Source: Heterodontus francisci
Lineage: Eukaryota
Length of the DNA: 64,000 nt
Assembly (NCBI RefSeq): GCF_036365525.1
Contig: NC_090378.1
Location: 120,451,593 to 120,515,592 of the forward strand
Direction: 5' to 3'
Notes under the pieces: generated by a model
Seen by the model: the letters and a program-made list of their open reading frames with translations, nothing else
Database searches by the model: none
What the model was told of the DNA's origin: nothing
Part shown: positions 1 to 46,701 of the stretch, piece after piece
Layout: every line of letters starts with the position of its first letter
Numbering within the stretch: the stretch's first letter is position 1
Translations under genes and position numbers: made by a program

Positions 1-3000
1 GACTGTGTGTCCATTGTTATATATTATATATTATTGTGGGATGTGTCAGTACAGGAGGTGGGACCGTGTGTCCATTATTATATATAACTGTGGGATGTGT
101 CAGTACAGGAGGTGGGACAGTGTGTCCATTATTATATATTATATATAAATGTGGGATGTGTCATTGCAGGTGGTGGGACCGTGTGTCCGTTATTATATAT
201 TATATATAAATGTGGGATGTGTCATTGCAGGTGGTGGGACTGTGTGTCTGTTATTATATATTATATCTAACTGTGGGACATGTCACTACAGGAGGTGGGA
301 CTGTGTGTTTATTTTTATATATTATATCTAACTTTGGGACGTGTCAGTACCAGAGGTGGGACTGTGTGTCCATTATTATATATAACTGTGGGATGTGTCA
401 GTACAGGAGGTAGGACAGTGTTTCCATTATTATATATTATATATAAATGTGGGATGTGTCATTGCAGGTGGTGGGTCTGTGTGTCCGTTATTTTATATTA
501 TATCTAACTGTGGGATGTGTCAATACAGGAGGTGGGACTTTGTGTCTATTATTATTTATTATATATAACTGTGGGATGTTTCAGTACCGGAGGTGGGACT
601 GTGTGTCCATTATCATATATTATATATAATTGTGGGATGTGTCAGTACAGGAGGTGGGACTGTGTGTCCATTATTATATATTATATATAACTGTGGGATG
701 TGTCAGTACCGGAGGTGGGACTGTGTGTCCATTATCATATATTATATATAATTGTGGGATGTGTCAGTGCAGGAGGTGGGACTGTGTGTCCATTAATATA
801 TATTATATATAACTGTAGGATGTGTTAGTACAGGAGGTGGGACTGTGTTTCCATTATTATTTATTATATATAACTGTGGGATGTGTCAGGACACGAGGTG
901 GGACTGTGTTTCCATTATTATTTGTTATATATAATTGTGGGATGTGTCAGTACAGGAGGTGGGACGGTGTGTCCATTATTATATGTTATATATACCTGTG
1001 GGATGTGTCAGTACAGGAGGTGGGACTGTGTGTCAATTATTATTTATTATATATAACTGTGGGACGTGTCAGTGCAGGAGGTGGGACTGTGTGTCCATTA
1101 TTATATATTATATATGATTGTGGGATGTGTCAGTACAGGAGGTGGGACTGTGTGTCCATTATTATATATAACTGTGGGATGTGTCAGTACTGGAGGTGGG
1201 ACAGTGTGTCCATTATTATTTATTATATATAACTCTGGGATGTGTCAGTACAGGAGGTGGGACTGTGTATCCATTGTTATACATTATATATTACTGTGGG
1301 ATGTGTCAGTGCAGGAGGTGGGACTGTGTTTCCATTATTATTTATTATATATAACTCTGGGATGTGTCAGTACAGGAGGTGGGACGGTGTGTCCATTATT
1401 ATATGTTATATATACCTGTGGGATGTGTCAGTACAGGAGGTGGGACTGTGTGTCAATTATTATTTATTATATATAACTGTGGGACGTGTCAGTGCAGGAG
1501 GTGGGACTGTGTGTCCATTATTATATATTATATATGATTGTGGGATGTGTCAGTACAGGAGGTGGGACTGTGTGTCCATTATTATATATAACTCTGGGAT
1601 GTGTCAGTACTGGAGGTGGGACAGTGTGTCCATTATTATTTATTATATATAACTCTGGGATGTGTCAGTACAGGAGGTGGGACTGTGTATCCATTGTTAT
1701 ACATTATATATTACTGTGGGATGTGTCAGTGCAGGAGGTGGGACTGTGTTTCCATTATTATTTATTATATATAACTCTGGGATGTGTCAGTACAGGAGGT
1801 GGGACTGTGTGTCCATTGTTATATGTTATATATTATTGTGGGATGTGTCAGGGCAGGAGGTGGGACTATGTGTCCATTATTATATATAACTGTGGGATGT
1901 GTCAGTACAGGAGGTGGGACTGTGTGTCCATTATTATATATAACTGTGGGATGTGTCAGTACAGGAGGTGGGACTGTGTGTCCATTATTATTTATTATAT
2001 ATAACTCTGGGATGTGTCAGTACAGGAGGTGGGACTGTGTGTCCATTATTATATATAACTGTGGGATGTGTCAGTACAGGAGGTGGGACTGTGTGTCCAT
2101 TATTATATATAACTGTGGGAAGTGTCAGTCCAGGAGGTGGGACTGTGTGTCCATTATTATATATAACTGTGGGATGTGTCAGTACAGGAGGTGGGACTGT
2201 GTGTCCATTATTATTTATTATATATATCTCTGGGATGTGTCAGTACAGGAGGTGCGACTGTGTGTCCATTATTATATATTATATATAACTGTGGGATGTG
2301 TCAGTACAGTAGGTGGGACTGTGTGTCTATGAGTATATATTATATATTATTGTGGGACGTGTCAGTACCGGAGTTTGGACTGTGTGTCCATTATTATAAA
2401 TTATATATAACTGTGGGACATGTCACTACAGGAGGTGGGACTGTGTGTCCATTATTATATATTATATCTAACTGTGGGATGTGTCAGTACAGGAGGTAGG
2501 ACAGTGTGTCCATTATTAAATATTATATATAACTGTGGGACGTGTCAGTACAGGAGGTGGGACAGTGTGTCCATTAATATATATTATATATAACTGGAGG
2601 ATGTGTTAGTACAGGAGGTGGGACTGTGTTTCCATTATTATTTATGATATATAACTGTGGGATGTGTCAGGACAGGAGGTGGGACTGTGTTTCCATTATT
2701 ATTTGTTATATATAATTGTGGGATGTGTCAGTACAGGAGGTGGGACTGTGTGTCCATTATTATATGTTATATATAACTGTGGGATGTGTCAGTACAGGAG
2801 GTGGGACTGTGTGTCAATTATTATTTATTATATATAACTGTGGGACGTGTCAGTACAGGAGGTGGGACTGTGTGTCCATTATTATATATTATATATGATT
2901 GTGGGATGTGTCAGTACAGGAGGTGGGACTGTGTGTCCATTATTATATATAACTGTGGGATGTGTCAGTACAGGAGGTGGGACTGTGTGTCCATTATTAT

Positions 3001-6000
3001 TTATTATATATAACTCTGGGATGTGTCAGTACAGGAGGTGGGACTGTGTATCCATTGTTATATATTATATATTATTGTGGGATGTGTCAGTGCAGGAGGT
3101 GGGACTGTGTGTCCATTATTATATATAACTATGGGATGCGTCAGTACAGGAGGTGGGACTGTGTGTCCATTATTATTTATTATATATAACTGTGGGATGT
3201 GTCAGTACAGGAGGTGGGACTGTGTGTCCATTATTATATATAACTGTGGGATGTGTCAGTACAGGAGGTGGGACTGTGTGTCCATTATTATAGATAACTG
3301 TGGGATGTGTCAGTACAGGAGGTGGGACTGTGTGTCCATTATTATTTATTATATATAACTCTGGGATGTGTCAGTACAGGAGGTGCGACTGTGTGTCCAT
3401 TATTATATATTATATATAACTGTGGGATGTGTCAGTACAGTAGGTGGGACTGTGTGTCTATGAGTATATATTATATATTATTGTGGGACGTGTCAGTACC
3501 GGAGTTTGGACTGTGTGTCCATTATTATAAATTATATATAACTGTGGGACATGTCACTACAGGAGGTGGGACTGTGTGTCCATTATTATATATTATATCT
3601 AACTGTGGGATGTGTAAGTACAGGAGGTAGGACAGTGTGTCCATTATTATCTATAATATATAACTGTGGGATGTGTCAGTACAGGAGGTGGGACAGTGTG
3701 TCCATTATTATATATTATATAAAACTGTGGGATGTGTCAGTGCAGGAAGTGGGACAGTGTGTCCATTATTTTATATTATATATAACTGTGGGATGTGTCA
3801 GTACAGGAGGTGGGACTGTGTGTCCATTATTATATATTAGATATAACTGTGGGATGTGTCAGTGCAGGAAGTGGGACTGTGTGTCCATTATTAAATATTA
3901 TATATAACTGTGGGATGTGTCAGTACAGGAGGTGGGACTGTGTGTCCATTATTATATATTATATATAACTGTGGGATGTGTCAGTTCAGGAGGTGTGACT
4001 GTGTGTCCGTTATTATATATTATATATAACTGTGGGATGTGTCAGTACAGGAGGTGGGACTGTGTGTCCATTATTTTATATTATATATAACTGTGGGATG
4101 TGTCAGTACAGGAGGTGGGACTGTGTGTCTATTATTATATATTAGATATAACTGTGGGATGTGTCAGTGCAGGAACTGGGACTGTGTGTCCATTATTACA
4201 TATTAGATATAACTGTGGGATGTGTCATTGCAGGTGGTGGGACTGTGTGTCCGTTATTATATATTATATCTAACTGTGGGATGTGTCAGTACAGGAGGTG
4301 GGACTGTATGTCCATTATTATATATTAGATATAACTGTGGGATGTGTCAGTGCAGGAGGTGGGACCGTGTGTCCATTATTTTATATTATATATAACTGTG
4401 GGATGTGTCAGCACAGGAGGTGGGACTGTGTGTCCATTATTATATATTATATATAACTCTGGGATGTGTCAGTACAGGAGGTGGGGCTGTGTGTCCATTA
4501 TTATTTAGTATATATAACTGGGGATGTGTCAGTACAGGAGGTGGGACTGTGTGTCCATTATTATTTATTATATATAACTGTGGGATGTGTCTTTACAGGA
4601 GGTGGGACTTTGTGTCCATTATTATATATTATGTATAACTGTGGGATGTGTCAGTACAGGAGGTGGGACTTTGTGTCCATTGTTATATATGATATATAAC
4701 TGTGGTATGTATCAGAACAGTAGGTGGGCCTGTGTGTCCATTATTATATATTAAATATAACTGTGGGATGTGTCAGTACAGGAGGTGGGACTGTGTGTCC
4801 ATTATTATTTATTATATATAACTGTGGGATGTGTCAGTACAGGAGGTGGGAATGTGTGTCCATTATTATTTATTATATATAACTGTGGGATGTGTCAGTC
4901 CAGGAGGAGGGACTGTGTGTCCATTATTATATATTATATATAACTGTGGGACGTGTCAGTGCAGGAGGTGGGACTGTGTGTCCATTATTATATACTATAT
5001 ATAACTGTGGGACATGTCAGTGCAGGAGGTGGGACTGTGTGTCCAATATTATTTATTATATATAACTGTTGGATGTGTCAGTACAGGAGGTGGGACTGTG
5101 TGTCTATTATTATATATTATTTCTCACTGTGGGATGTGTCAGTACAGGAGGTGGGACTGTAAATCCATTATTATATATTATATATAACTGTGGGATGTGT
5201 CAGTACAGGAGGTGGGACTGTGTGTCCAATATTATTTATTATATATAACTGTTGGATGTGTCAGTACAGGAGGTGGGACTGTGTGTTTATTATTATATAT
5301 TATTTCTCACTGTGGGATGTGTCAGTACAGGAGGTGGGACTGTAAATCCATTATTATATATTATATATAACTGTGGGATGTGTCAGTACAGGAGGTGGGA
5401 CTGTGTGTGCATTATTATATATTATATATAACTGTGGGACGTTTCAGTGCAGGAGGTGGGACTGTGTGTCCAATATTATTTATTATATATAACTGTGGGA
5501 TGTGTCAGTACAGGAGGTGGGACTGTGAATCCATTATTATATATTATATATAACTGTGGGATGTGTCAGTACAGGATGTGAGACCGTGTGTCCATTATTA
5601 TATATTATATATAACTCTGGGATGTGTCAGTACAGGAGGTGGGACTGTGTGTCCATTATTATTTAGTATATATAACTGTGGGATGTGTCAGTACAGGAGG
5701 TGGGACTATGTGACCATTATTATTTAGTATATATAACTGTGGGAGTGTCAGTACAGGAGGTGGGACTGTGTGTCCATTATTATATATTATATATAACTCT
5801 GGGATGTGTTTGTACAGGAGGTGGGACTGTGTGTCCATTATTATATATTATATATAACTCTGGGATGTGTCAGTACAGGAGGTGGGACTATGTGACCATT
5901 ATTATTTAGTATATATAACTATGGGATGTGTCAGTACAGGAGGTGGGACTGTGTGTCCATTATTATTTATTATATATAACTGTGGGATGTGTCAGTACAG

Positions 6001-9000
6001 GAGGTGGAACTGTGTGTCCATTATTATTTATTATATATAACTGTGGGATGTGTCAAAACAGGAGGTGGGACTGTGTGACCATTATTATATATTATATATA
6101 ACTGTGGGATGTGTCAGTACAGGAGGTGGGACTGTGTGTCCATTATTTTATATTATATATAACTGTGGGATGTGTCAGTGCAGGAGGTGGGACTGTGTGT
6201 CCATTATTTTATATTATATATAACTGTGGGATGTGTCAGTACAGGAGGTGGGACTGTGTGTCCATTATTTTATATTATATATAACTGTGGGATGTGTCAG
6301 TGCAGGAAGTGGGACTGTGTGTCCATTATTATATATTAGATATAACTGTGGGATGTGTCAGTACAGGAGGTGGGACTGTGTGTGCATTATTTTATATATA
6401 TATAACTGTGGGATGTGTCAGTACAGGAGGTGCGACTGTGTGTCCATTATTATATATTATATATAACCGTGGGATGTGTCAGTACAGGAGGTGGGACTGT
6501 GCGTCCATTATTATATATTATATATAACTGTTGGATGTGTCAGTCCAGGAGGTGGGACTTTGTTTCCATTATTATTTATTTTATATAACTGTGGGAAGTG
6601 TCAGTACAGGATGTGAGACTATGTGTCCATTATTATATATTATATATAACTGTGGGATGTGTCAGTGCGGGAGGTGGGACTGTGTGTCCATTATTATATA
6701 TTATATATAACTGTTGGATGTGTCAGTCCAGGAGGTGGGACTTTGTTTCCATTATTATTTATTTTATATAACTGTGGGATGTGTCAGTACAGGATGTGAG
6801 ACTATGTGTCCATTATTATATATTATATATAACTGTGGGATGTGTCAGTGCGGGAGGTGGGACTGTGTGTCCATTATTATATATTATATATAACTCTGGG
6901 ATGTGTCAGTGCAGGAGGTGGGACTGTGTGTCCAATATTATTTATTATATATAACTGTTGGATGTGTCAGTCCAGGAGGTGGGACTTTGTTTCCATTATT
7001 ATTTATTTTATATAACTGTGGGATGTGTCAGTACAGGATGTGAGACTGTGTGTCCAATATTATTTATTATATATAACTGTTGGATGTGTCAGTCCAGGAG
7101 GTGGGACTTTGTTTCCATTATTATTTATTTTATATAACTGTGGGATGTGTCAGTGCAGGATGTGAGACTATGTGTCCATTATTATATATTATATATAACT
7201 GTGGGATGTGTCAGTGCGGGAGGTGGGACTGTGTGTCCATTATTATATATTATATATAACTCTGGGATGTGTCAGTGCAGGAGGTGGGACTGTGTGTCCA
7301 TTATTATTTATTATATATAACTGTGGGATGTGTCAGTACAGGATGTGAGACTATGTGTCCATTATTATATATTATATATAACTGTGGGATGTGTCAGTGC
7401 GGGAGGTGGGACTGTGTGTCCATTATTATATATTATATATAACTCTGGGATGTGTCAGTGCAGGAGGTGGGACTGTGTGTCCATTATTATTTATTATATA
7501 TAACTGTGGGATGTGTCAGTACAGGAGGTGGGACTGTGTGTCCATTATTATATATAACTGTGGGATGTGTCAGTACAGGAGGTGGAACTGTGTGTCCATT
7601 ATTATTTATTATATATAACTGTGGGATGTGTCAGTACAGGAGGTGGAACTGTGTGTCCATTATTATTTATTATATATAACTGTGGGATGTGTCAGTACAG
7701 GAGGTGGGACTGTGTGTCCATTATTTTATATTATATATAACTGTGGGATGTGTCAGTGCAGGAGGTGGGACTGTGTGTCCATTATTTTATATTATATATA
7801 ACTGTGGGATGTGTCAGTGCAGGAGGTGGGACTGTGTGTCCATTATTTTATATTATATATAACTGTGGGATGTGTCAGTGCAGGAGGTGGGACTGTGTGT
7901 CCATTATTTTATATTATATATAACTGTGGGATGTGTCAGTACAGGAGGTGGGACTGTGTGTCCATTATTATATATTAGATATAACTGTGGGATGTGTCAG
8001 TACAGGAGGTGGGACTGTGTGTCCATTATTATATATTATATATAACTGTGGGATGTGTCAGTACAGGATGTGAGACTGTGTGTCCAATATTATTTATTAT
8101 ATATAACTGTTGGATGTGTCAGTCCAGGAGGTGGGACTTTGTTTCCATTATTATTTATTATATAGAAATGTGGGATGTGTCAGTACAGGTTGTGAGACTG
8201 TGTGTCCATTATTATTTATTTTATATAACTGTGGGATGTGTCAGTACAGGATGTGAGACTATGTGTCCATTATTATATATTATATATAACTCTGGGATGT
8301 GTCAGTACAGGAGGTGGGACTGTGTGTCCATTATTATTTAGTATATATAACTGTGGGATGTGTCAGCACAGGAGGTGGGACTGTATGTCCATTATTATTT
8401 ATTATATATAACTGTGGGATGTGTCAGTACAGGAGGTGGGACTGTATGTCCATTATTATTTATTATATATAACTGTGGGATGTGTCATTACAGGAGGTGG
8501 GACTGTATGTCCATTATTATTTATTATATATAACTGTGGGATGTGTCATTACAGGAGGTGGGACTGTGTGTCCATTATTATTTAGTATATATAACTGTGG
8601 GATGTGTCAGTACAGGAGGTGGGACTGTATGTCCATTATTATTTATTATATATAACTGTGGGATGTGTCAGTGCAGGAGGCGGGACTGTGTGTTCATTAT
8701 TATTTAGTATATATAACTGTGGGATGTGTCAGTACAGGAGCTGGGACTGTGTGTCCATTATTATATATTATATATAACTGTGGGATGTGTCAGTACCGGA
8801 GGTGGGACTGTGTGTCCATTATTATATATTATATATAACTGTGGAATGTGTCAGTACCGGAGGTGGGACTTTGTGTCCATTGTTATATATGATATATAAC
8901 TGTGGGATGTGTCAGTACAGGAGGTGGGACTGTGTGTCCATTATTATTTATTATATATAACTGTGGGATGTGTCAGTACAGGAGGTGGGACTGTGTGTCC

Positions 9001-12000
9001 ATTATTATATATAACTGTGGGATGTGTCAGTACAGGAGGTGGGACTGTGTGTCCATTATTATAGATAACTGTGGGATGTGTCAGTACAGGAGGTGGGACT
9101 GTGTGTCCATTATTATTTATTATATATAACTCTGGGATGTGTCAGTACAGGAGGTGCGACTGTGTGTCCATTATTATATATTATATATAACTGTGGGATG
9201 TGTCAGTACAGTAGGTGGGACTGTGTGTCTATGAGTATATATTATATATTATTGTGGGACGTGTCAGTACCGGAGTTTGGACTGTGTGTCCATTATTATA
9301 AATTATATATAACTGTGGGACATGTCACTACAGGAGGTGGGACTGTGTGTCCATTATTATATATTATATCTAACTGTGGGATGTGTAAGTACAGGAGGTA
9401 GGACAGTGTGTCCATTATTATCTATAATATATAACTGTGGGATGTGTCAGTACAGGAGGTGGGACAGTGTGTCCATTATTATATATTGTATATAACTGTG
9501 GGATGTGTCAGTGCAGGAAGTGGGACAGTGTGTCCATTATTTTATATTATATATAACTGTGGGATGTGTCAGTACAGGAGGTGGGACTGTGTGTCCATTA
9601 TTATATATTAGATATAACTGTGGGATGTGTCAGTGCAGGAAGTGGGACTGTGTGTCCATTATTAAATATTATATCTAACTGTGGGATGTGTCAGTACAGG
9701 AGGTGGGACTGTGTGTCCATTATTATATATTATATATAACTGTGGGATGTGTCAGTTCAGGAGGTGTGACTGTGTGTCCGTTATTATATATTATATATAA
9801 CTGTGGGATGTGTCAGTACAGGAGGTGGGACTGTGTGTCCATTATTTTATATTATATATAACTGTGGGATGTGTCAGTACAGGAGGTGGGACTGTGTGTC
9901 CATTATTACATATTAGATATAACTGTGGGATGTGTCATTGCAGGTGGTGGGACTGTGTGTCCGTTATTATATATTATATATAACTGTGGGATGTGTCAGT
10001 ACAGGAAGTGGGACTGTATGTCCATTATTATATATTAGATATAACTGTGGGATGTGTCAGTGCAGGAGGTGGGACTGTGTGTCCATTATTACATATTAGA
10101 TAAAACTGTGGGATGTGTCATTGCAGGTGGTGGGACTGTGTGTCCGTTATTATATATTATATATAACTGTGGGATGTGTCAGTGCAGGAAGTGGGACAGT
10201 GTGTCCATTATTTTATATTATATATAACTGTGGGATGTGTCAGCACAGGAGGTGGGACTGTGTGTCCATTATTATATATTATATATAACTCTGGGATGTG
10301 TCAGTACAGGAGGTGGGGCTGTGTGTCCATTATTATTTAGTATATATAACTGGGGATGTGTCAGTACAGGAGGTGGGACTGTGTGTCCATTATTATTTAT
10401 TATATATAACTGTGGGATGTGTCATTACAGGAGGTGGGACTGTGTGTCCATTATTATATATTATGTATAACTGTGGGATGTGTCAGTACAGGAGGTGGGA
10501 CTTTGTGTCCATTGTTATATATGATATATAACTGTGGTATGTATCAGAACAGTAGGTGGGCCTGTGTGTCCATTATTATATATTAAATATAACTGTGGGA
10601 TGTGTCAGTACAGGAGGTGGGACTGTGTGTCCATTATTATTTATTATATATAACTGTGGGATGTGTCAGTACAGGAGGTGGGAATGTGTGTCCATTATTA
10701 TTTATTATATATAACTGTGGGATGTGTCAGTCCAGGAGGAGGGACTGTGTGTCCATTATTATATATTATATATAACTGTGGGACGTGTCAGTGCAGGAGG
10801 TGGGACTGTGTGTCCATTATTATATACTATATATAAAAGTGGGACATGTCAGTGCAGGAGGTGGGACTGTGTGTCCAATATTATTTATTATATATAACTG
10901 TTGGATGTGTCAGTACAGGAGGTGGGACTGTGTGTCTATTATTATATATTATTTCTCACTGTGGGATGTGTCAGTACAGGAGGTGGGACTGTAAATCCAT
11001 TATTATATATTATATATAACTGTGGGATGTGTCAGTACAGGAGGTGGGACTGTGTGTGCATTATTATATATTATATATAACTGTGGGACGTTTCAGTGCA
11101 GGAGGTGGGACTGTGTGTCCAATATTATTTATTATATATAACTGTGGGATGTGTCAGTACAGGAGGTGGGACTGTGAATCCATTATTATATATTATATAT
11201 AACTGTGGGATGTGTCAGTACAGGATGTGAGACCGTGTGTCCATTATTATATATTATATATAACTCTGGGATGTGTCAGTACAGGAGGTGGGACTGTGTG
11301 TCCATTATTATTTAGTATATATAACTGTGGGATGTGTCAGTACAGGAGGTGGGACTATGTGACCATTATTATTTAGTATATATAACTGTGGGAGTGTCAG
11401 TACAGGAGGTGGGACTGTGTGTCCATTATTATATATTATATATAACTCTGGGATGTGTCAGTACAGGAGGTGGGACTATGTGACCATTATTATTTAGTAT
11501 ATATAACTATGGGATGTGTCAGTACAGGAGGTGGGACTGTGTGTCCATTATTATTTATTATATATAACTGTGGGATGTGTCAGTACAGGAGGTGGGACTG
11601 TGTGTCCATTGTTATATATTATATATTATTGTGGGATGTGTCAGTGCAGGAGGTGGGACTGTGTGTCCATTATTACATATTAGATATAACTGTGGGATGT
11701 GTCATTGCAGGTGGTGGGACTGTGTGTCCATTATTATATATTATATATAACTGTGGGATGTGTCAGTGCAGGAAGTGGGACAGTGTGTCCATTATTTTAT
11801 ATTATATATAACTGTGGGATGTGTCAGTACAGGAGGTGGGACTGTGTGTCCATTATTATTTATTATATATAACAGTGGGATGTGTCAGTACAGGATGTGA
11901 GACTGTGTGTCCAATATTATTTATTATATATAACTGTTGGATGTGTCAGTCCAGGAGGTGGGACTTTGTTTCCATTATTATTTATTATATAGAAATGTGG

Positions 12001-33000: not shown

Positions 33001-36000
33001 TTATTATTTATTATATATAACTGTGGGATGTGTCAGTACAGGAGGTGGGACTGTGTGTCCATTATTATTTAGTATATATAACTGTGGGATGTGTCAGTAC
33101 AGGAGGTGGGATTGTATGTCCATTATTATTTATTATATATAACTGTGGGATGTGTCATTACAGGAGGTGGGACTGTGTGTCCATTGTTATATATGATATA
33201 TAACTGTGGGATGTGTCAGTACAGGAGGTGGGACTGTGTGTCCATTATTATATATTATATATAACTGTGGGATGTGTCAGTACCGGAGGTGGGACTTTGT
33301 GTCCATTGTTATATATGATATATAACTGTGGGATGTGTCAGTACAGGAGGTGGGACTGTGTGTCCATTATTATTTATTATATATAACTGTGGGTTGTGTC
33401 GGTCCAGGAGGTGGGACTTTGTGTCCATTGTTATATATGATATATAACTGTGGGATGTGTCAGTACCGGAGGTGGGACTTTGTGTCCATTGTTATATATG
33501 ATATATAACTGTGGGATGTGTCAGTACAGGAGGTGGGAATGTATGTCCATTATTATTTATTATATATAACTGTGGGATGTGTCAGTCCAGGAGGAGGGAC
33601 TGTGTGTCCATTATTATATATTATATATAACTGTGGGACGTGTCAGTACAGGAGGTGGGACTGTGTGTCTATTATTATATATTATTTCTCACTGTGGGAT
33701 GTGTCAGTACAGGAGGTGGGACTGTGAATCCATTATTATATATTATTTATAACTGTGGGATGTGTCAGTACAGGAGGTGGGACTGTGTGTGCATTATTAT
33801 ATATTATATATAACTGTGGGACGTTTCAGTGCAGGAGGTGGGACTGTGTGTCCAATATTATTTATTATATATAACTGTGGGATGTGTCAGTACAGGAGGT
33901 GGGACTGTGAATCCATTATTATATATTATATATAACTGTGGGATGTGTCAGTACAGGAGGTGGGACTGTGTGTGCATTATTATATATTATATATAACTGT
34001 GGGACGTTTCAGTGCAGGAGGTGGGACTGTGTGTCCAATATTATTTATTATATATAACTGTGGGATGTGTCAGTACCGGAAGTGAGACTGTGTTTTCATT
34101 ATTATATCTTATATATAACTGTGGGATGTGTCAGTACAGGAGGTGGCACTGTGTGTCCATTATTATTTATTATATATAACTGTGGGATGTGTCAGTACAG
34201 GAGGTGGGACTGTGTGTCCATTATTATTTAGTATATATAACTGTGGGATGTGTCAGTACAGGAGGTGGGACTGTGTGTCCATTATTATTTGGTATATATA
34301 ACTGTGGGATGTGTCAGTACAGGAGGTGGGAATGTGTGTCCATTATTATTTATTATATATAACTGTGGGATGTGTCAGTACAGGAGGTGGGACTGTGTGT
34401 TCATTATTATTTATTATATATAACTGTGGGATGTGTCAGTACAGGAGGTGGGACTCTGAATCCATTATTATTTATTATATATAACTGTGGGATGTGTCAG
34501 TGCAGGAGGTGGGACTGTGTGTCCATTATTATATATTATATATAACTGTGGGATGTGTCAGTGCAGGAGGTGGGACTGTGTGTTCATTATTATTTATTAT
34601 ATATAACTGTGGGATGTGTCAGTACAGGAGGTGGGACTCTGAATCCATTATTATTTATTATATATAACTGTGGGTTGTCTCGGTCCAGGAGGTGGGACTG
34701 TGTGTCCATTATTATATATTATATATATCTGTGGGACGTGTCAGTGCAGGAGGTGGGACTGTGTTTCCAATATTATTTATTATATATCACTGTGGGATGT
34801 GTCAGTACCGGAAGTGAGACTGTGTTTTCATTATTATATATTATATATAACTGTGGGTTGTGTCAGGAGAGGAGGTGGGACTGTGTGTCCATTATTATTT
34901 ATTATATAGAACTGTGGGATGTGTCAGTACAGGAGGTGGGACTGTGTGTCCATTATTATTTAGTATATATAACTGTGGGATGTGTCAGTACAGGAGGTGG
35001 GAATGTGTGTCCATTATTATTTATTATATATAACTGTGGGATGTGTCAGTACAGGAGGTGGGAATGTGTGTCCATTATTATATATTATATATAACTGTGG
35101 GAGTGTCAGTACAGGTTGTGAGACTGTGTGTCCATTATTATATATTATATATAACTGTGGGATGTGTCAGTACAGGAGGTGGGAATGTGTGTCCATTATT
35201 ATTTATTATATATAACTGTGGGATGTGTCAGTACAGGAGGTGGGACTGTGTATCCATTATTATATATTATATATAACTGTGGGATGTGTCAGTACAGGAG
35301 GTGGGACTCTGAATCCATTATTATTTATTATATATAACTGTGGGATATGTCAGTCCAGGAGGTGGGACTGTGTGTCCATTATTATATATTATATATAACT
35401 GTGGGATGTGTCAGTACAGGAGGTGGGACTCTGAATCCATTATTATTTATTATATATAACTGTGGGATATGTCAGTCCAGGAGGTGGGACTGTGTGTCCA
35501 TTATTATATATTATATATAACTGTGGGATGTGTCAGTACAGGAGGTGGGAATGTGTGTCCATTATTATTTATTATATATAACTTGGGATGTGTCAGTACA
35601 GGAGGTGGGACTGTGTGTTCATTATTATTTATTATATATAACTGTGGGATGTGTCAGTACAGGAGGTGGGACTCTGAATCCATTATTATTTATTATATAT
35701 AACTGTGGGTTGTGTCAGTCCAGGAGGTGGGACTGTGTGTCCATTATTATATATTATATATAACTGTGGGACGTGTCAGTGCAGGAGGTGGGACTGTGTT
35801 TCCAATATTATTTATTATATATAACTGTGGGATGTGTCAGTACCGGAAGTGAGACTGTGTTTTCATTATTATATATTATATATAACTGTGGGTTGTGTCA
35901 GGAGAGGTGGTGGGACTGTGTGTCCATTATTATTTATTATATAGAACTGTGGGATGTGTCAGTACAGGTTGTGAGACTGTGTGTCCATTATTATATATTA

Positions 36001-39000
36001 TATATAACTGTGGGATGTGTCAGTACAGGAGGTGGGACTGTGTGTCCATTATTATTTAGTATATATAACTGTGGGATGTGTCAGGACAGGAGGTGGGACT
36101 GTGTGTTCATTATTATTTATTATATATAACTGTGGGATGTGTCAGTACAGGAGGTGGGACTCTGAATCCATTATTATTTATTATATACAACTGTGGGATA
36201 TGTCAGTCCAGGAGGTGGGACTGTGTTTCCAATATTATTTATTATATATAACTGTGGGATGTGTCAGTACCGGAGGTGAGACTGTGTTTTCATTAGTATA
36301 TCTTATATATAACTGTGGGATGTGTCAGTGCAGCAGGTGGGACTGTGTGTCCATTATTATTTATTATATATAACTGTGGGATGTGTCAGTACAGGATGTG
36401 AGACTGTGTGTCCATTATTATATATTATATATAACTGTGGGAAGTGTCGGTGCAGGAGGTGGGACTGTGTGTCCATTATTATATATTATATATAACTGTG
36501 GGATGTGTCAGTACAGGAGGTGGGACTGTGTGTCCATTATTATATATTATATATAACTGTGGGACGTGTCAGAACAGGAGGTGGGACTGTGTGTCTATTA
36601 TTATATATTATTTCTCACTGTGGGATGTGTCAGTACAGGAGGTGGGACTGTGAATCCATTATTATATATTATTTATAACTGTGGGATGTGTCAGTACAGG
36701 AGGTGGGACTGTGTGTGCATTATTATATATTATATATAACTGTGGGACATTTCAGTGCAGGAGGTGGGACTGTGAATCCATTATTATATATTATTTATAA
36801 CTGTGAGATGTGTCAGTACAGGAGGTGGGACTGTGTGTGCATTATTATATATTATATATAACTGTGGGACGTGTCATTACAGGAGGTGGGACTGTGTGTC
36901 CGATATTATTTATTATATATAACTGTGGGATGTGTCAGTACCGGAAGTGAGACTGTGTTTTCATTATTATATCTTAGATATAACTGTGGGATGTGTCAGT
37001 ACAGGAGGTGGGACTGTGTGTCCATTATTATTTAGTATATATAACTGTGGGATGTGTCAGTACAGGAGGTGGGACTCTGAATCCATTATTATTTATTATA
37101 TATAACTGTGGGATATGTCAGTCCAGGAGGTGGGACTGTGTGTCCATTATTATTTATTATATATAACTGTGGGATGTGTCAGTACAGGAGGTGGGAATGT
37201 GTGTCCATTATTATTTATTATATATAACTGTGGGATGTGTCAGTACAGGAGGTGGGACTCTGAATCCATTATTATTTATTATATATAACTGTGGGATATG
37301 TCAGTCCAGGAGGTGGGACTGTGTGTCCATTATTATTTATTATATATAACTGTGGGATGTGTCATTACAGGAGGTGGGACTGTATGTCCATTATTATTTA
37401 TTATATATAACTGTGTGATGTGTCAGTGCGGGAGGTGGGACTGTGTGTCCATTATTATTTAGTATATATAACTGTGGGATGTGTCAGTACAGGAGGTGGG
37501 ATTGTATGTCCATTATTATTTATTATATATAACTGTGGGATGTGTCATTACAGGAGGTGGGACTGTGTGTCCATTATTATTTGGTATATATAACTGTGGG
37601 ATGTGTCAGTACAGGAGGTGGGACTGTGTGTCCATTATTATATATTATATATAACTGTGGGATGTGTCAGTACCGGAGGTGGGACTTTGTGTCCATTGTT
37701 ATATATGATATATAACTGTGGGATGTGTCAGTACAGGAGGTGGGACTGTGTGTCCATTATTATTTATTATATATAACTGTGGGTTGTGTCGGTCCAGGAG
37801 GTGGGACTTTGTGTCCATTGTTATATATGATATATAACTGTGGGATGTGTCAGTACCGGAGGTGGGACTTTGTGTCCATTGTTATATATGATATATAACT
37901 GTGGGATGTGTCAGTACAGGAGGTGGGAATGTATGTCCATTATTATTTATTATATATAACTGTGGGATGTGTCAGTCCAGGAGGAGGGACTGTGTGTCCA
38001 TTATTATATATTATATATAACTGTGGGACGTGTCAGTACAGGAGGTGGGACTGTGTGTCTATTATTATATATTATTTCTCACTGTGGGATGTGTCAGTAC
38101 AGGAGGTGGGACTGTGAATCCATTATTATATATTATTTATAACTGTGGGATGTGTCAGTACAGGAGGTGGGACTGTGTGTGCATTATTATATATTATATA
38201 TAACTGTGGGACGTTTCAGTGCAGGAGGTGGGACTGTGTGTCCAATATTATTTATTATATATAACTGTGGGATGTGTCAGTACAGGAGGTGGGACTGTGA
38301 ATCCATTATTATATATTATATATAACTGTGGGATGTGTCAGTACAGGAGGTGGGACTGTGTGTGCATTATTATATATTATATATAACTGTGGGACGTTTC
38401 AGTGCAGGAGGTGGGACTGTGTGTCCAATATTATTTATTATATATAACTGTGGGATGTGTCAGTACCGGAAGTGAGACTGTGTTTTCATTATTATATCTT
38501 ATATATAACTGTGGGATGTGTCAGTACAGGAGGTGGCACTGTGTGTCCATTATTATTTATTATATATAAATGTGGGATGTGTCAGTACAGGAGGTGGGAC
38601 TGTGTGTCCATTATTATTTAGTATATATAACTGTGGGATGTGTCAGTACAGGAGGTGGGACTGTGTGTCCATTATTATTTGGTATATATAACTGTGGGAT
38701 GTGTCAGTACAGGAGGTGGGAATGTGTGTCCATTATTATTTATTATATATAACTGTGGGATGTGTCAGTACAGGAGGTGGGACTGTGTGTTCATTATTAT
38801 TTATTATATATAACTGTGGGATGTGTCAGTACAGGAGGTGGGACTCTGAATCCATTATTATTTATTATATATAACTGTGGGATGTGTCAGTGCAGGAGGT
38901 GGGACTGTGTGTCCATTATTATATATTATATATAACTGTGGGATGTGTCAGTGCAGGAGGTGGGACTGTGTGTTCATTATTATTTATTATATATAACTGT

Positions 39001-42000
39001 GGGATGTGTCAGTACAGGAGGTGGGACTCTGAATCCATTATTATTTATTATATATAACTGTGGGTTGTCTCGGTCCAGGAGGTGGGACTGTGTGTCCATT
39101 ATTATATATTATATATATCTGTGGGACGTGTCAGTGCAGGAGGTGGGACTGTGTTTCCAATATTATTTATTATATATCACTGTGGGATGTGTCAGTACCG
39201 GAAGTGAGACTGTGTTTTCATTATTATATATTATATATAACTGTGGGTTGTGTCAGGAGAGGAGGTGGGACTGTGTGTCCATTATTATTTATTATATAGA
39301 ACTGTGGGATGTGTCAGTACAGGAGGTGGGACTGTGTGTCCATTATTATTTAGTATATATAACTGTGGGATGTGTCAGTACAGGAGGTGGGAATGTGTGT
39401 CCATTATTATTTATTATATATAACTGTGGGATGTGTCAGTACAGGAGGTGGGAATGTGTGTCCATTATTATATATTATATATAACTGTGGGAGTGTCAGT
39501 ACAGGTTGTGAGACTGTGTGTCCATTATTATATATTATATATAACTGTGGGATGTGTCAGTACAGGAGGTGGGACTGTGTGTCCATTATTATTTAGTATA
39601 TATAACTGTGGGATGTGTCAGTACAGGAGGTGGGAATGTGTGTCCATTATTATTTATTATATATAACTGTGGGATGTGTCAGGACAGGAGGTGGGACTGT
39701 GTGTTCATTATTATTTATTATATATAACTGTGGGATGTGTCAGTACAGGAGGTGGGACTCTGAATCCATTATTATTTATTATATATAACTGTGGGATATG
39801 TCAGTCCAGGAGGTGGGACTGTGTTTCCAATATTATTTATTATATATAACTGTGGGATGTGTCAGTACCGGAGGTGAGACTGTGTTTTCATTAGTATATC
39901 TTATATATAACTGTGGGATGTGTCAGTGCAGCAGGTGGGACTGTGTGTCCATTATTATATATTATATATAACTGTGGGATGTGTCAGTACAGGAGGTGGG
40001 ACTGTGTGTCCATTATTATTTAGTATATATAACTGTGGGATGTGTCAGTACAGGAGGTGGGACTGTGTGTCCATTATTATATATTATATATAACTGTGGG
40101 ATGTGTCAGTACAGGAGGTGGGACTGTGTGTCCATTTTTATTTATTATATATAACTGTGGGATGTGTCAGTACAGGATGTGAGACTGTGTGTCCATTATT
40201 ATATATTAGATATAACTGTGGGATGTGTCAGTACAGGAGGTGGGACTGTGTGTCCATTATTATTTAGTATATATAACTGTGGGATGTGTCAGTACAGGAG
40301 GTCGGACTTTGTGTCCATTATTATTTATTATATATAACTGTGGGATGTGTCATTACAGGAGGTGGGACTGTGTGTCCATTATTATATATTATATATAACT
40401 GTGGGATGAGTCAGTACAGGAGGTGGGACTGTGTGTCCATTATTATATATTATATATAACTGTGGTATGTCTCAGTACAGGAGGTGGGACTGTGTGTCCA
40501 TTATTATATATTATATATAACTGTGGGATGTGTCAGTACAGGAGGTGGGACTGTGTGTCCATTATTATATATTATATATAACTGTGGGATGTGTCAGTAC
40601 AGGAGGTGGGACTGTGTGTCCATTATTATATATTATATATAACTGTGGGATGTGTCAGTACAGGAGGTGGGACTGTGTGTCCATTATTATATATTATATA
40701 TAACTGTGGGATGTGTCAGTACAGGAGGTGGGACTGTGTGTCCATTATTATATATTATATATAACTGTGGGATGTGTCAGTAAAGGAGGTGGCACTGTGT
40801 GTCCATTATTATATATTATATATAACTGTGGGATGTGTCAGTACAGGAGGTGGGACTGTGTGTCCATTATTATATATTATATATAACTGTGGGATGTGTC
40901 AGTACAGGAGGTGGGACTGTGTGTCCATTATTATATATTATATATAACTGTGGGATGTGTCAGTCCAGGAGGTGGGACTGTGTGTCCATTATTATATATT
41001 ATATATAACTGTGGGATGTGTCAGTACAGGAGGTGGGACTGTGTGTCCATTATTATATATTATATATAACTGTGGGATGTGTCAGTACAGGAGGTGGGAC
41101 TGTGTGTCCATTATTATATATTATATATAACTGTGGGCTGTGTCAGTACAGGAGGTGGGACTGTGTGTCCATTATTATATATTATATATAACTGTGGGAT
41201 GTGTCAGTACAGGAGGTGGGACTGTGTGTCCATTATTATATATTATATATAACTGTGGGATGTGTCAGTACAGGAGGTGGGACTGTGTGTCCATTATTAT
41301 TTATTATATATAACTGTGGGATGTGTCAGTACAGGAGGTGGGACTGTGTGTCCATTATTATATATTATATATAACTGTGGGATGTGTCAGTACAGGAGGT
41401 GGGACTGTGTGTCCATTATTATTTATTATATATAACTGTGGGATGTGTCAGTACAGGAGGTGGGACTGTGTGCTCATTATTATTTATTATATATAACTGT
41501 GGGACGTGTCAGTACAGGAGGTGGGACTGTGTGTTCATCATTATTTATTATATATAACTGTGGGACGTGTCAGTACAGGAGGTGGGACTGTGTGTCCATT
41601 ATTATATATTATATATAACTGTGGGATGTGTCAGTACAGGAGGTGGGACTGTGTGTACATTATTATTTATTATATATAACTGTGGGATGTGTCAGTACAG
41701 GAGGTGGGACTGTGTGTCCATTATTATATATTATATATAACTGTGGGATGTGTCAGTACAGGAGGTGGGACTGTGTGTCCATTATTATATATTATATATA
41801 ACTGTGGGATGTGTCAGTACAGGAGGTGGGACTGTGTGTCCATTATTATATATTATATATAACTGTGGGCTGTGTCAGTACAGGAGGTGGGACTGTGTGT
41901 CCATTATTATATATTACATATAACTGTGGGATGTGTCATTACAGGAGGTGGGACTGTGTGTCCATTATTATTTATTATATATAACTGTGGGATGTGTCAG

Positions 42001-45000
42001 TACAGGAGATGGGACTGTGTGTCCATTATTATTTATTATATATAACTGTGGGATGTGTCAGTACAGGAGGTGGGACTGTGTGTCCATTATTATATATTAT
42101 ATATAACTGTGGGATGTGTCAGTACAGGAGGTGGGACTGTGTGTCCATTATTATTTATTATATATAACTGTGGGATGTGTCAGTACAGGAGGTGGGACTG
42201 TGTGTCCATTATTATATATTATATATAACTGTGGGATGTGTCAGTACAGGAGGTGGGACTGTGTGTCCATTATTATTTATTATATATAACTGTGGGATGT
42301 GTCAGTACAGGAGGTGGGACTGTGTGTTCATTATTATTTATTATATATAACTGTGGGATGTGTCAGTACAGGAGGTGGGACTGTGTGTTCATCATTATTT
42401 ATTATATATAACTGTGGGACGTGTCAGTACAGGAGGTGGGACTGTGTGTCCATTATTATATATTATATATAACTGTGGGATGTGTCAGTACAGGAGGTGG
42501 GACTGTGTGTTCATTCTTATTTATTATATATAACTGTGGGATGTGTCAGTACAGGAGGTGGGACTGTGTGTCCATTATTATATATTATATATAACTGTGG
42601 GATGTGTCAGTACAGGAGGTGGGACTGTGTGTTCATTATTATTTATTATATATAACTGTGGGATGTGTCAGTACAGGAGGTGGGACTGTGTGTCCATTAT
42701 TATATATTATATATAACTGTGGGATGTGTCATTACAGGAGGTGGGACTGTGTGTCCATTATTATATATTATATATAACTGTGGGATGTGTCAGTACAGGA
42801 GGTGGGACTGTGTGTCCATTATTATATATTATATATAACTGTGGGATGTGTCAGTACAGGAGGTGAGACTGTGTGTCCATTATTATATATTATATATAAC
42901 TGTGGGATGTGTCAGTACAGGAGGTGGGACTGTGTGTCCATTATTATTTAGTATATATAACTGTGGGATGTGTCAGTACAGGAGGTCGGACTTTGTGTCC
43001 ATTATTATTTATTATATATAACTGTGGGATGTGTCATTACAGGAGGTGGGACTGTGTGTCCATTATTATATATTATATATAACTGTGGGATGTGTCAGTA
43101 CAGGAGGTGGGACTGTGTTTCCATTATTATATATTATATATAACTGTGGTATGTCTCAGTACAGGAGGTGGGACTGTGTGTCCATTATTATATATTATAT
43201 ATAACTGCAGGATGTGTCAGTACAGGAGGTGGGACTGTGTGTCCATTATTATATATTATATATAACTGTGGGATGTGTCAGTACAGGTGGTGGGACTGTG
43301 TGTCCATTATTATATATTATATATAACTGTGGGATGTGTCAGTACAGGAGGTGGGACTGTGTGTCCATTATTATATATTATATATAACTGTGGGATGTGT
43401 CAGTACAGGAGGTGGGACTGTGTGTCCATTATTATATATTATATATAACTGTGGGATGTGTCAGTACAGGAGGTGGGACTGTGTGTCCATTATTATATAT
43501 TATATATAACTGTGGGATGTGTCAGTACAGGAGGTGGGACTGTGTGTCCATTATTATATATTATATATAACTGTGGGATGTGTCAGTACAGGAGGTGGGA
43601 CTGTGTGTCCATTATTATATATTATATATAACTGTGGGATGTGTCAGTACAGGAGGTGGGACTGTGTGTCCATTATTATATATTATATATAACTGTGGGA
43701 TGTGTCAGTACAGGAGGTGGGACTGTGTGTCCATTATTATATATTATATATAACTGTGGGATGTGTCAGTACAGGAGGTGGGACTGTGTGTCCATTATTA
43801 TATATTATATATAACTGTGGGCTGTGTCAGTACAGGAGGTGGGACTGTGTGTCCATTATTATATATTATATATAACTGTGGGATGTGTCAGTACAGGAGG
43901 TGGGACTGTGTGTCCATTATTATATATTATATATAACTGTGGGATGTGTCAGTACAGGAGGTGGGACTGTGTGTCCATTATTATATATTATATATAACTG
44001 TGGGATGTGTCAGTACAGGAGGTGGGACTGTGTGTCCATTATTATATATTATATATAACTGTGGGCTGTGTCAGTACAGGAGGTGGGACTGTGTGTCCAT
44101 TATTATATATTATATATAACTGTGGGATGTGTCATTACAGGAGGTGGGACTGTGTGTCCATTATTATTTATTATATATAACTGTGGGATGTGTCAGTACA
44201 GGAGATGGGACTGTGTGTCCCTTATTATTTATTATATATAACTGTGGGATGTGTCAGTACAGGAGGTGGGACTGTGTGTCCATTATTATATATTATATAT
44301 AACTGTGGGATGTGTCAGTACAGGAGGTGGGACTGTGTGTCCATTATTATTTATTATATATAACTGTGGGATGTGTCAGTACAGGAGGTGGGACTGTGTG
44401 TCCATTATTATATATTATATATAACTGTGGGATGTGTCAGTACAGGAGGTGGGACTGTGTGTCCATTATTATTTATTATATATAACTGTGGGATGTGTCA
44501 GTACAGGAGGTGGGACTGTGTGTCCATTATTATTTATTATATATAACTGTGGGACGTGTCAGTACAGGAGGTGGGACTGTGTGTTCATCATTATTTATTA
44601 TATATAACTGTGGGACGTGTCAGTACAGGAGGTGGGACTGTGTGTTCATCATTATTTATTATATATAACTGTGGGACGTGTCAGTACAGGAGGTGGGACT
44701 GTGTGTCCATCATTATATATTATATATAACTGTGGGACGTGTCAGTACAGGAGGTGGGACTGTGTGTTCATTATTATTTATTATATATAACTGTGGGATG
44801 TGTCAGTACAGGAGGTGGGACTGTGTGTCCATTATTATATATTATATATAACTGTGGGATGTGTCAGTACAGGAGGTGGGACTGCGTGTTCATTATTATA
44901 TATTATATATAACTGTGGGATGTGTCAGTACAGGAGGTGGGACTGCGTGTTCATTATTATATATTATATATAACTGTGGGATGTGTCAGTACAGGAGGTG

Positions 45001-45990
45001 GGACTGTGTGTTCATTATTATATATTATATATAACTGTGGGATGTGTCAGTACAGGAGGTGGGACTGTGTGTTCATTATTATATATTATATATAACTGTG
45101 GGATGTGTCAGTACAGGAGGTGGGACTGTGTGTCCATTATTATATATTATATATAACTGTGGGATGTGTCAGTACAGGAGGTGGGACTGTGTGTTCATTA
45201 TTATATATTATATATAACTGTGGGATGTGTCAGTACAGGAGGTGGGACTGTGTGTTCATTATTATATATTATATATAACTGTGGGATGTGTCAGTACAGG
45301 AGGTGGGACTGTGTGTCCATTATTATATATTAGATATAACTGTGGGATGTGTCAGTACAGGAGGTGGGACTGTGTGTCCATTATTATATATTATATATAA
45401 CTGTGGGATGTGTCAGTACAGGAGGTGGGACTGTGTGTCCATTATTATATATTATATATAACTGTGGGATGTGTCAGTACAGGAGGTGGGACTGTGTGTC
45501 CATTATTATATATTATATATAACTGTTGGATGTGTCAGTACAGGAGGTGGGACTGTGTGTTCATTATTATATATTATATATAACTGTGGGATGTGTCAGT
45601 ACAGGAGGTGGGACTGTGTGTCCATTATTATATATTATATATAACTGTGGGATGTGTCAGTACAGGAGGTGGGACTGTGTGTCCATTATTATATATTATA
45701 TATAACTGTGGGATGTGTCAGTACAGGAGGTGGGACTGTGTGTCCATTATTATTTATTATATATAACTGTGGGATGTGTCAGTGCAGGAGGTGGGACTGT
45801 GTGTTCATTATTATATATTATATATAACTGTGGGATGTGTCAGTGCAGGAGGTGGGACTGTGTGTTCATTATTATATATTATATATAACTGTGGGATATG
45901 TCAATACAGGAGGTGGGAATGTGTGTCCATTATTATATATTATATATAACTGTGGGATGTGTCAGTACAGGAGGTGGGACTGTGTCTATT
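1..45990. repeat. Giant tandem array of a 61-bp unit (consensus aactgtgggatgtgtcagtacaggaggtgggactgtgtgtccattattatatattatatat), ~750 copies, truncated by the window start; 54-bp deletion variants in the first ~14 kb
   Basis: Unit read directly, with a 61-nt period throughout. 54-bp units lack 7 nt of the AT tract (e.g. ~1890-2170). Last partial unit ends at ...gggactgtgtctatt (45990). Confidence 0.99.
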
Positions 45991-45992
45991 GA

Positions 45993-46020
45993 GGTTTTTG
46001 TACGGCTCTGTCTCACTGTG
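45993..46020 (-). promoter_or_regulatory. Canonical 12-bp-spacer V(D)J recombination signal sequence of the V gene
   Basis: Minus strand reads CACAGTG (46020-46014), AGACAGAGCCGT (12 bp), ACAAAAACC (46001-45993). Heptamer and nonamer are both perfect consensus and abut the V coding end. Confidence 0.98.
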
Positions 46021-46697: not shown

Positions 46698-46701
46698 GCA
46701 A

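What the first reader, a model, noticed from the sequence alone, without database searches (positions are those of the whole stretch)
1..46020. A >46-kb satellite begins 2 bp after the RSS of an intact V-kappa, occupying the V-J interval
Seen: the V gene has an open frame, good splice sites and a perfect 12-RSS. The 61-bp array starts 2 nt beyond the nonamer and continues without interruption to the window edge, with no J or C. Established: cartilaginous-fish light chains are arranged as compact V-J-C clusters with V and J close together, and rearrangement occurs within a cluster. Inference: either this cluster has a hugely inflated, probably length-polymorphic V-J spacer that RAG must span or excise, or the V has been orphaned. 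A VNTR here could act as an allele-specific modulator of cluster usage or of allelic exclusion.
Basis: partly seen in the sequence, partly recalled or inferred. Interest (0 to 1): 0.85.

Follow-up and report, generated by a model that had tools for sequence, protein, structure and literature searches.

The report
Satellite-swollen shark kappa V-J gap
An intact shark antibody light-chain V gene is followed straight after its recombination signal by at least 46 kb of a 61-base tandem repeat, where textbooks expect about 0.5 kb to the J segment. The repeat grew out of the old V-J spacer and looks like a passenger that V-J joining cuts out, with no function shown.

Summary
A 61-bp tandem array of about 755 units runs unbroken from base 1 to about 45990. 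It stops 2 to 8 nt from the consensus 12-RSS of an intact minus-strand kappa-type V gene. The window holds no J, no C and no second RSS.

- RNA contigs of the same species show the predicted leader-V splice and V-J-joined transcripts of this V family. One contig of a paralogue runs V, RSS, satellite.
- Three Chiloscyllium punctatum gene models read through their V RSS into DNA whose translation matches the first satellite unit (13/17, 11/16 and 9/12 residues). The junction is therefore ancient, and the unit derives from the ancestral V-J spacer.
- The array has a homogenised V-proximal zone, 2-3 kb block duplications and a decayed far end.

Published nurse-shark kappa clusters have V-J spacers of about 500 bp.

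Best reading: this is one member of a multi-copy kappa cluster family whose V-J interval is inflated by a passenger satellite, with J probably just past the window edge. An orphan V is not excluded. The units are only weak RSS look-alikes. The "QQNLK" motif is family-wide, so it is not diagnostic. A regulatory or VNTR role has no support.

This scan had already found the same arrangement at more than 10 other kappa clusters of this genome.

The parts
1..45990 (-). 61-bp satellite array of about 755 units, uninterrupted, running off the left edge of the window. It fills the DNA 3' of the V RSS, which is the V-J interval if J lies beyond the edge.
   Evidence: TRF; segmentation and unit spacings; internal structure; first unit read.
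45993..46020 (-). Consensus 12-RSS of the V: heptamer CACAGTG 46020-46014, 12-nt spacer 46013-46002, nonamer ACAAAAACC 46001-45993.
   Evidence: Sequence. It scores 16/16 in the consensus count. Its translation is conserved in C. punctatum gene models.
46021..46322 (-). V exon of a kappa-type (type III / NS4) light-chain V, open, 100 codons plus 2 nt of the split codon.
   Evidence: Translation; Pfam V-set E=1.4e-17; best hits are shark V genes at 72-79% and tetrapod IGKV at about 60%; heavy RNA contig depth for the family.
46323..46508 (-). Leader intron, 186 nt, GT..AG, phase 1.
   Evidence: Sequence. RNA contigs skip exactly 186 nt between 46322 and 46509. RNA depth is zero over 46328-46411.
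46509..46557 (-). Leader exon coding part (MISPIQLIWPLAFCVA plus 1 nt). The 5' UTR extends to about 46600-46630.
   Evidence: the RNA depth profile ends between 46608 and 46635; the leader is nearly identical in C. punctatum proteins.
46617..46671 (-). Promoter elements: TATA box (TTTATAAAG, 46625-46617) and an octamer-like ATTTACAT (46671-46664), one mismatch from ATTTGCAT.
   Evidence: Function is inferred from position and from the RNA depth that starts downstream.

Best explanation
This is one copy of a multi-copy shark kappa (type III / NS4) light-chain cluster. Its V-J interval has been inflated from the ancestral few hundred bases to at least 46 kb by tandem amplification of a 61-bp piece of the original V-J spacer. 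The array was built and is kept homogeneous by unequal exchange and block duplication. It is carried as a passenger. When RAG joins the V 12-RSS to a J 23-RSS lying beyond the left edge of the window, the whole array would be cut out on the signal-joint circle, so the coding product is unaffected.

Shown here: the V is intact, the array abuts its RSS, this junction is ancient and shared by paralogues, and the family is spliced, V-J joined and expressed.

Inferred: this particular copy has its J-C just past the window edge, it is itself used, and the array has no function of its own.
For: Array and junction:
- The array is real and uninterrupted.
- The V, its splice sites and its 12-RSS are intact.

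Expression (RNA run X5):
- Depth is zero in the intron and upstream of the promoter, and very high on the leader and V exon.
- Joints skip the predicted 186-nt intron.
- Loose ends at the V 3' end read into a J segment encoding TFGKGTKI.
- One 103-nt contig of a paralogue (14 differences) spans V, RSS and satellite.

Family size (DNA run X1): flank contigs have depth about 100-112 against 4-10 for contigs private to single paralogues. That suggests some 15-30 near-identical copies.

Age of the junction: C. punctatum gene models P0003, P0004 and P0009 read through the RSS into a tail that matches the first unit at 13/17, 11/16 and 9/12 residues. The tail of P0004 scores E=2e-7. The satellite consensus translates to the same peptide.

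Array history:
- The V-proximal 100 units are 96-97.5% identical to their neighbours.
- Blocks of 33-48 units are duplicated at lags of 72, 95 and 106 units.
- The last 3 kb before the window edge drops to about 87% and is rich in short units, as expected near an array end.

Distance is no obstacle to RAG: mouse Igk joins V and J across 3.1 Mb (abstract of PMC13190342).

Unchecked scan notes report sister clusters with J 15-51 kb from V behind the same satellite.
Against: No J or C of this copy is in the window, so linkage to a J is extrapolated.

Expression is shown only for the family. Contigs cannot separate this copy from near-identical paralogues.

Satellite depth in DNA contigs is about 0.5-1.1 million, against 110-365 for the V family. 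That is several times more than 755 units per V copy, so some arrays may lie elsewhere, or beside V genes less than 85% alike.

Satellite sequence appears in RNA contigs at a level that DNA carry-over does not explain. 'Pure passenger' is therefore an assumption, not a result.

Array length rests on the assembly alone.
Confidence: 0.6

Rival explanations
1. Orphan V. The array or a later rearrangement has separated this V from any usable J-C. The V is then an intact but unused relic, or is used only by rare joining to another cluster.
For: No J, C or 23-RSS anywhere in the 64-kb window. Expression cannot be assigned to this copy. Scan notes list both 'V without J' and 'J-C without V' windows.
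Against: The V, promoter, splice sites and RSS show no decay at all. The 'V without J' and 'J-C without V' notes are what a 48-kb array does to 64-kb windows. Sister clusters are reported with J behind arrays of similar size. The array changes character near the window edge, as if about to end.
Confidence: 0.15
2. Functional satellite. The array is a working part of the cluster. It could be a field of over 1,200 co-oriented heptamer-like sites that RAG meets when scanning from J. It could be a transcribed spacer or insulator. It could be a length-variable element that sets how often a cluster or allele rearranges.
For: - There are 1,242 CACAGT on the V-coding strand and none on the other.
- 492 units read as a 12-13/16 23-RSS in V orientation, which only 2.3% of shuffled units reach.
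- The junction and unit are conserved between species.
- Satellite sequence is present in RNA contigs although the intron and upstream flank are at zero.
- In mice, RAG scans chromatin in an orientation-dependent way for convergent RSSs (abstract of 10.1101/2020.06.30.181222).
- The mouse Vk-Jk interval holds the regulatory elements Cer and Sis (PMC11153149).
Against: No unit scores 14/16 or more, and the nonamer lacks the A-run, while the true RSS scores 16/16. One orientation for all units is automatic in a tandem array. Conservation of the first unit shows descent, not selection on the array. No joint or loose end pointing to RAG cuts inside units was seen, though contigs would hardly show them. 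No allele sizing was possible.
Confidence: 0.2
3. Artefact. The V-array junction or the array length comes from misassembly of a genome-wide satellite next to a V gene.
For: Long tandem arrays are error-prone to assemble. The satellite is far more abundant in DNA contigs than this one array. No listed DNA contig of this exact copy bridges the junction (table 8).
Against: An RNA contig of a paralogue bridges V, RSS and satellite. DNA contigs cover the RSS bin at depth 132, and the loose ends listed show none that leaves the RSS for other sequence. Three independent C. punctatum gene models carry the same junction. The array has a structured, non-uniform interior and is not a collapsed or copied block.
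Confidence: 0.05

Closest known systems
Nurse-shark NS4 / horn-shark type III (kappa) V-J-C miniclusters (Lee et al. 2000, PMC2193156; review PMC5192425)
   Same: Same V type. The genes share a split leader, a leader intron of the same size (186 bp in NS4, 186 nt here), an octamer-type promoter and a classical RSS on the V. Both are multi-copy families of tens of genes, and kappa is the highly expressed light chain there.
   Different: Published split NS4 genes have a V-J intervening sequence of 502-524 bp. Here at least 46 kb of satellite follows the RSS and no J is in reach.
Mouse Igk Vk-Jk intervening region with Cer and Sis elements (PMC11153149, PMC5859386)
   Same: Both are non-coding DNA of tens of kb between the nearest V and J that deletional V-J joining removes. 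In mice this interval shapes V usage.
   Different: The mouse elements are unique CTCF-bound sequences in a translocon locus. Here the interval is a 61-bp satellite inside a single-V cluster. No factor binding is known or was tested.
Cryptic RSSs used during linear RAG scanning (10.1101/2020.06.30.181222; PMC13190342)
   Same: The units carry CAC-anchored heptamer-like motifs. All are in the orientation of the V RSS, which is convergent with a J RSS.
   Different: The match is weak (12-13 of 16, poor nonamer). No evidence of cutting exists. The orientation bias follows from the tandem structure.
Ordinary minisatellite or satellite arrays with higher-order block duplication
   Same: Head-to-tail units, local homogenisation, duplicated multi-unit blocks and decayed edges.
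   Different: The array starts at a fixed, species-conserved point 2 nt after a functional RSS, and it recurs at paralogous gene clusters.

Membership tests
Ig kappa-type (type III / NS4) germline V segment | Split leader, phase-1 intron and an open V exon with conserved Cys23, Trp41 and Cys104 | tested here: met
   RNA joints confirm the splice for the family.
Ig kappa-type (type III / NS4) germline V segment | V-set domain closest to kappa V genes | tested here: met
   Pfam V-set E=1.4e-17. Best hits are C. punctatum and S. torazame V genes at 72-79%, then tetrapod IGKV at about 60%.
Ig kappa-type (type III / NS4) germline V segment | 12-spacer RSS directly 3' of the V exon | tested here: met
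   CACAGTG, 12 nt, ACAAAAACC; 16/16 to consensus.
Cartilaginous-fish V-J-C minicluster | J segment within about 0.5 kb of the V (502-524 bp in NS4) | tested here: not met
   No J, FGxGT or 23-RSS in the 46 kb downstream or anywhere else in the window. Reference distance from PMC2193156.
Cartilaginous-fish V-J-C minicluster | One J and one C exon in cis, same orientation | not testable with these tools
   They would lie beyond the left edge of the window.
Cartilaginous-fish V-J-C minicluster | Rearranged and expressed in lymphoid tissue | tested here: inconclusive
   Shown for the V family: V-J joined contigs and huge exon depth in X5. Not resolvable for this copy.
Satellite / minisatellite array | Many head-to-tail copies of one unit with local homogenisation | tested here: met
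   About 755 units, 92% matches, block duplications.
Satellite / minisatellite array | Length polymorphism between alleles (VNTR) | not testable with these tools
   All runs laid were contigs. No long reads were available.
Array of cryptic RSSs | CAC-anchored heptamer and an A-rich nonamer at 12 or 23 nt | tested here: inconclusive
   492 units reach 12-13/16 as a 23-RSS and none reaches 14. The nonamer ACACAGTCC lacks the A-run. 2.3% of shuffled units do as well.
Array of cryptic RSSs | Cut or joined by RAG in lymphocytes | not testable with these tools
   This needs joint-capture or read-level data from shark lymphoid DNA.

The most novel reading that the evidence does not exclude
The satellite is a conserved working part of elasmobranch kappa clusters. 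It would be a transcribed 15-50 kb field of more than a thousand heptamer-like sites, all convergent with the J RSS. This field spaces V from J and slows or filters RAG's path between them. Each cluster would then rearrange rarely and independently, giving a sequence-encoded means of cluster and allelic exclusion in a genome with dozens of identical clusters.
Probability: 0.1. Interest if true: 0.85.

Novelty: new variant of a known kind. Interest (0 to 1): 0.55.

Why it matters
Shark light-chain genes are the textbook example of compact "miniclusters", with V and J about 0.5 kb apart. That compactness is often taken as the ancestral state and as the reason rearrangement stays within a cluster.

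A kappa family whose V-J interval is 15 to over 46 kb of satellite has two consequences. The compact picture came partly from cloning and short-read methods that cannot see such arrays. RAG in sharks must also routinely synapse and excise tens of kb.

The finding also provides natural material for an open question: how dozens of near-identical clusters are kept from all rearranging in one B cell. Clusters with different array lengths can be compared for usage.

If the array is only a passenger, the point is mainly one of genome architecture and annotation. Gene models will miss J-C or read through the RSS, as the C. punctatum models do.

Tried and rejected
I used the read-through tails of the protein models instead.
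- Scanning metagenome contigs for the unit: 0 hits. This says nothing about shark genomes.
- Searching the literature for a satellite in a shark V-J interval: nothing in the held library. Most of the older shark Ig papers are not in it.
- Using QQNLK as a copy-specific tag: rejected, because the motif is family-wide.
- Gene conversion between the real RSS and the variant units with a perfect heptamer: rejected as unsupported. The 18 H-type units lie in block-duplicated stretches of the array, so they probably descend from one event. Only 2 of their 3 changes go towards the real RSS, which has a chance probability of about 0.26 (the probability is my own arithmetic).
- Raw-shift autocorrelation for higher-order repeats: misleading, because 54-64-nt units shift the phase. 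Replaced by a unit-based comparison.
- Copy number of the satellite from contig depth: only an order of magnitude can be given.
The exons were searched by reference separately.
Full report
**Observation**

Tandem Repeats Finder reports one 61-bp array from 76 to 45985, with 754.8 copies, 92% matches and 0% indels. Bases 1-75 are the same repeat.

Segmenting on a conserved 12-mer gives 756 anchors. Every gap between neighbours is 53-64 nt, so no transposon or unique stretch interrupts the array. Base composition is flat over the array (GC 0.37-0.39, GC skew about +0.45) and changes abruptly at 46 kb.

On the minus strand, directly beside the array, lies a complete germline V gene:
- ATG at 46557.
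- Leader exon to 46509, ending in phase 1.
- A 186-nt GT..AG intron.
- An open V exon at 46322-46021 with the canonical Cys, Trp and Cys.
- Heptamer CACAGTG, a 12-nt spacer and nonamer ACAAAAACC, ending at 45993.
- Two bases, then the first repeat unit, which is 5 nt shorter than the others.

A TATA box (46625-46617) and an octamer-like ATTTACAT (46671-46664) lie upstream.

The V exon hits Pfam V-set at E=1.4e-17. Its best database relatives are V genes of Chiloscyllium punctatum (72-79% identity) and Scyliorhinus torazame (72%). Tetrapod kappa V genes follow at about 60%. It is therefore a kappa-type (type III / NS4) V of an elasmobranch.

The window has no J and no C:
- No FGxGT occurs in any frame.
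- The J sequence recovered from RNA has no match.
- The only exact 23-RSS-type nonamer is the complement of the V's own nonamer.
- There is no C-exon match, though the query was only 40 aa.

**Is the junction real, and is the gene family used?**

One look-up found runs of the same species (organism A), a close relative (organism B) and others, all kept as contigs. I laid four runs on 45880-46700 at 85% likeness.

Run X5 behaves as RNA:
- Depth is zero over the leader intron (46328-46411) and upstream of the promoter (46636-46700).
- Depth on the leader and V exon is in the millions.
- Joints skip exactly 186 nt between 46322 and 46509, with the ends expected of GT..AG on the minus strand.
- Loose ends at the 3' end of the V read, on the coding strand, into a J segment encoding TFGKGTKI.

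The V family is therefore spliced as predicted, V-J joined and highly expressed.

One 103-nt X5 contig covers 45959-46062, that is V end, RSS and satellite, with 14 differences and one gap. This is a germline transcript of a paralogous cluster that has the same junction.

In the DNA run X1 the RSS bin is covered at depth 132. The loose ends listed include none that leaves the RSS for non-satellite DNA.

The leader, intron and promoter contigs of X1 have depth about 100-112, against 4-10 for contigs private to single paralogues. That suggests some 15-30 near-identical copies.

The contigs cannot tell this copy from its near-identical sisters, so its own use is not shown.

Only the Leu codon varies, with 38% of RNA depth reading Thr.

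**Origin of the array**

Three C. punctatum gene models from an independent assembly read through their V RSS into the DNA behind it. After the nonamer-encoded YKN, their tails match the translation of the window's first unit at 13/17, 11/16 and 9/12 residues. The distance from the nonamer to the stop in the AT-rich part is nearly the same (17 residues in P0003 as in the window, 16 in P0004). The tail of P0004 scores E=2e-7 against 5.8 billion proteins. The satellite consensus translates to the same peptide.

The sequence that starts 2 nt after the nonamer is therefore not a recent insertion. It is the old V-J spacer, older than the split of the two species, and the 61-bp unit is a piece of it that was amplified.

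The C. punctatum V genes mostly sit on short contigs (0.6-16 kb). That is what a short-read assembly would give if an array followed, but it proves nothing.

A close relative (organism B) has the V exon at 97% identity, the leader region at 96.5% and abundant satellite. No contig links them.

**Anatomy of the array**

Only 248 distinct unit sequences make up the 755 units. Three zones can be told apart:
- The 100 units nearest the V are 96-97.5% identical to their neighbours, which points to recent local amplification.
- The middle (about 40-20 kb) consists of multi-unit blocks of 33-48 units duplicated at lags of 72, 95 and 106 units.
- The far 3 kb at the window edge falls to about 87% identity and is rich in short units.

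The third zone is the usual look of an array end. I take it as a weak sign that the array stops soon after the window does.

This structured interior also argues against a copy-paste assembly artefact.

**RSS likeness**

The V-coding strand carries 1,242 CACAGT and the other strand none. Read as heptamer, 23 nt, nonamer, 492 units reach 12-13 of 16 consensus positions, typically CACAGTT, 23 nt, ACACAGTCC. None reaches 14, whereas the true RSS scores 16. Among composition-matched shuffled units, 2.3% do as well. The nonamer lacks the A-run that matters for RAG binding (established knowledge). The units are weak cryptic signals at best, and their single orientation follows from the tandem structure.

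There are 29 perfect heptamers. Eighteen belong to one variant that also shares 'AGA' with the real spacer. These lie in the block-duplicated part of the array, so they probably descend from one event. Only two of their three changes go towards the real RSS. That gives no support for conversion from the RSS.

**Abundance and transcription**

Satellite bins in X1 sum to about 0.5-1.1 million, against 110-365 for the V family. That is several-fold more than 755 units per V copy. Further V subfamilies less than 85% alike, arrays without a V, or counting error could explain the excess. I cannot decide which.

In X5 the satellite bins reach 40,000-127,000 while the intron and upstream flank are at zero. 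With the DNA ratio of about 10,000 to 1, carry-over DNA giving that much satellite would put the flank at about 12, which would have been seen. The satellite is therefore transcribed at a low level. This fits read-through germline transcripts such as the bridging contig, and sterile transcripts of unrearranged shark IgL genes are known (PMC5192425). Strand and extent cannot be read from contigs.

**Comparison with what is known**

Split nurse-shark NS4 genes have a 186-bp leader intron and a V-J intervening sequence of 502-524 bp. The family has about 50 members (PMC2193156). Reviews and a 2025 genome paper describe all cartilaginous-fish Ig genes as miniclusters (PMC5192425 and PMC12227049). 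I found no paper in the held library that describes a satellite in a shark V-J interval.

Distance itself is no obstacle to RAG. Mouse Igk joins across 3.1 Mb (PMC13190342). The mouse Vk-Jk interval carries the regulatory elements Cer and Sis (PMC11153149). That is the nearest functional analogue, but nothing here tests such a role.

**Earlier notes of this scan**

The scan has already met the same arrangement on other DNA of this genome. More than ten kappa clusters over about 7 Mb of the same piece carry the 61-bp satellite right after the V RSS. Their reported V-J distances are 15-51 kb, and four were followed up. These are unchecked notes.

I re-tested three of their claims here. The junction is real and conserved between species. 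The family is joined and expressed. The units look only weakly like an RSS. All three held.

**Verdict**

The most likely reading, at about 0.6, is a rearranging kappa cluster whose V-J interval is swollen by a passenger satellite grown from the ancestral spacer, with J-C just beyond the window. Alternatives:
- An orphan V, about 0.15.
- A satellite with a function of its own, about 0.2.
- An assembly artefact, about 0.05.

It is a new variant of a known kind of locus. It is moderately surprising to a comparative immunologist, and no function has been shown.

Noticed in passing
window 46708-46906: A polypyrimidine/polypurine (CT-rich) low-complexity tract of about 200 bp starts about 40 bp upstream of the octamer-like motif of the V promoter.
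   Followed up: no
window 49747-50840, 56167-60387, 60518-62331: Three further tandem arrays lie upstream of the V: 43-bp units x25, 32-bp units x132 and 23-bp units x79. None is related to the 61-mer. Another first-stage note reads this region as a decayed gene. The long ORFs there are repeat translations.
   Followed up: no
window 54622-54852 (-) and 55554-55901 (+): ORFs that look by eye like fragments of a LINE reverse transcriptase and its C-terminal region. Not checked against Pfam.
   Followed up: no
window 47788-48164: A run of 377 N: an assembly gap or masked stretch.
   Followed up: no
window 5131-40799 (29 sites): There are 29 units with a perfect CACAGTG heptamer. Eighteen belong to one variant (CACAGTG AGAAAT...AATAG) and lie in block-duplicated stretches of the array. 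They probably trace to one event amplified, not repeated conversion from the real RSS.
   Followed up: yes
window about 45932, in DNA run X1: Two contigs join a satellite unit to non-satellite sequence on the side away from the V (loose end 'before 45932', agreement 0.73). These may be far ends of arrays elsewhere in the genome.
   Followed up: no
window 45880-45991, in RNA run X5: Satellite sequence is present in RNA contigs (summed depth 40,000-127,000) although the intron and upstream flank are at zero. This points to low-level transcription of the arrays, probably read-through from unrearranged V promoters.
   Followed up: partly
proteins P0003, P0006-P0008 versus P0001, P0002, P0004, P0009: C. 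punctatum kappa V genes fall into two FR3 types: GSGSGTSF, and the one-residue-longer GTQVSSTHF. The window's GSQQNLKF has the shorter length. Both types carry the satellite-like tail after the RSS.
   Followed up: no
protein P0005 (S. torazame): This gene model splices the V exon straight to a C exon on a 21-kb contig. In that catshark assembly V and C are therefore less than 21 kb apart, either because the array is small there or because it was collapsed.
   Followed up: no
proteins P0074, P0103, P0104: Ig V-like proteins filed under Salmonella and Klebsiella on contigs of about 300 bp. They are most likely vertebrate DNA contaminating bacterial assemblies. Not pursued.
   Followed up: no
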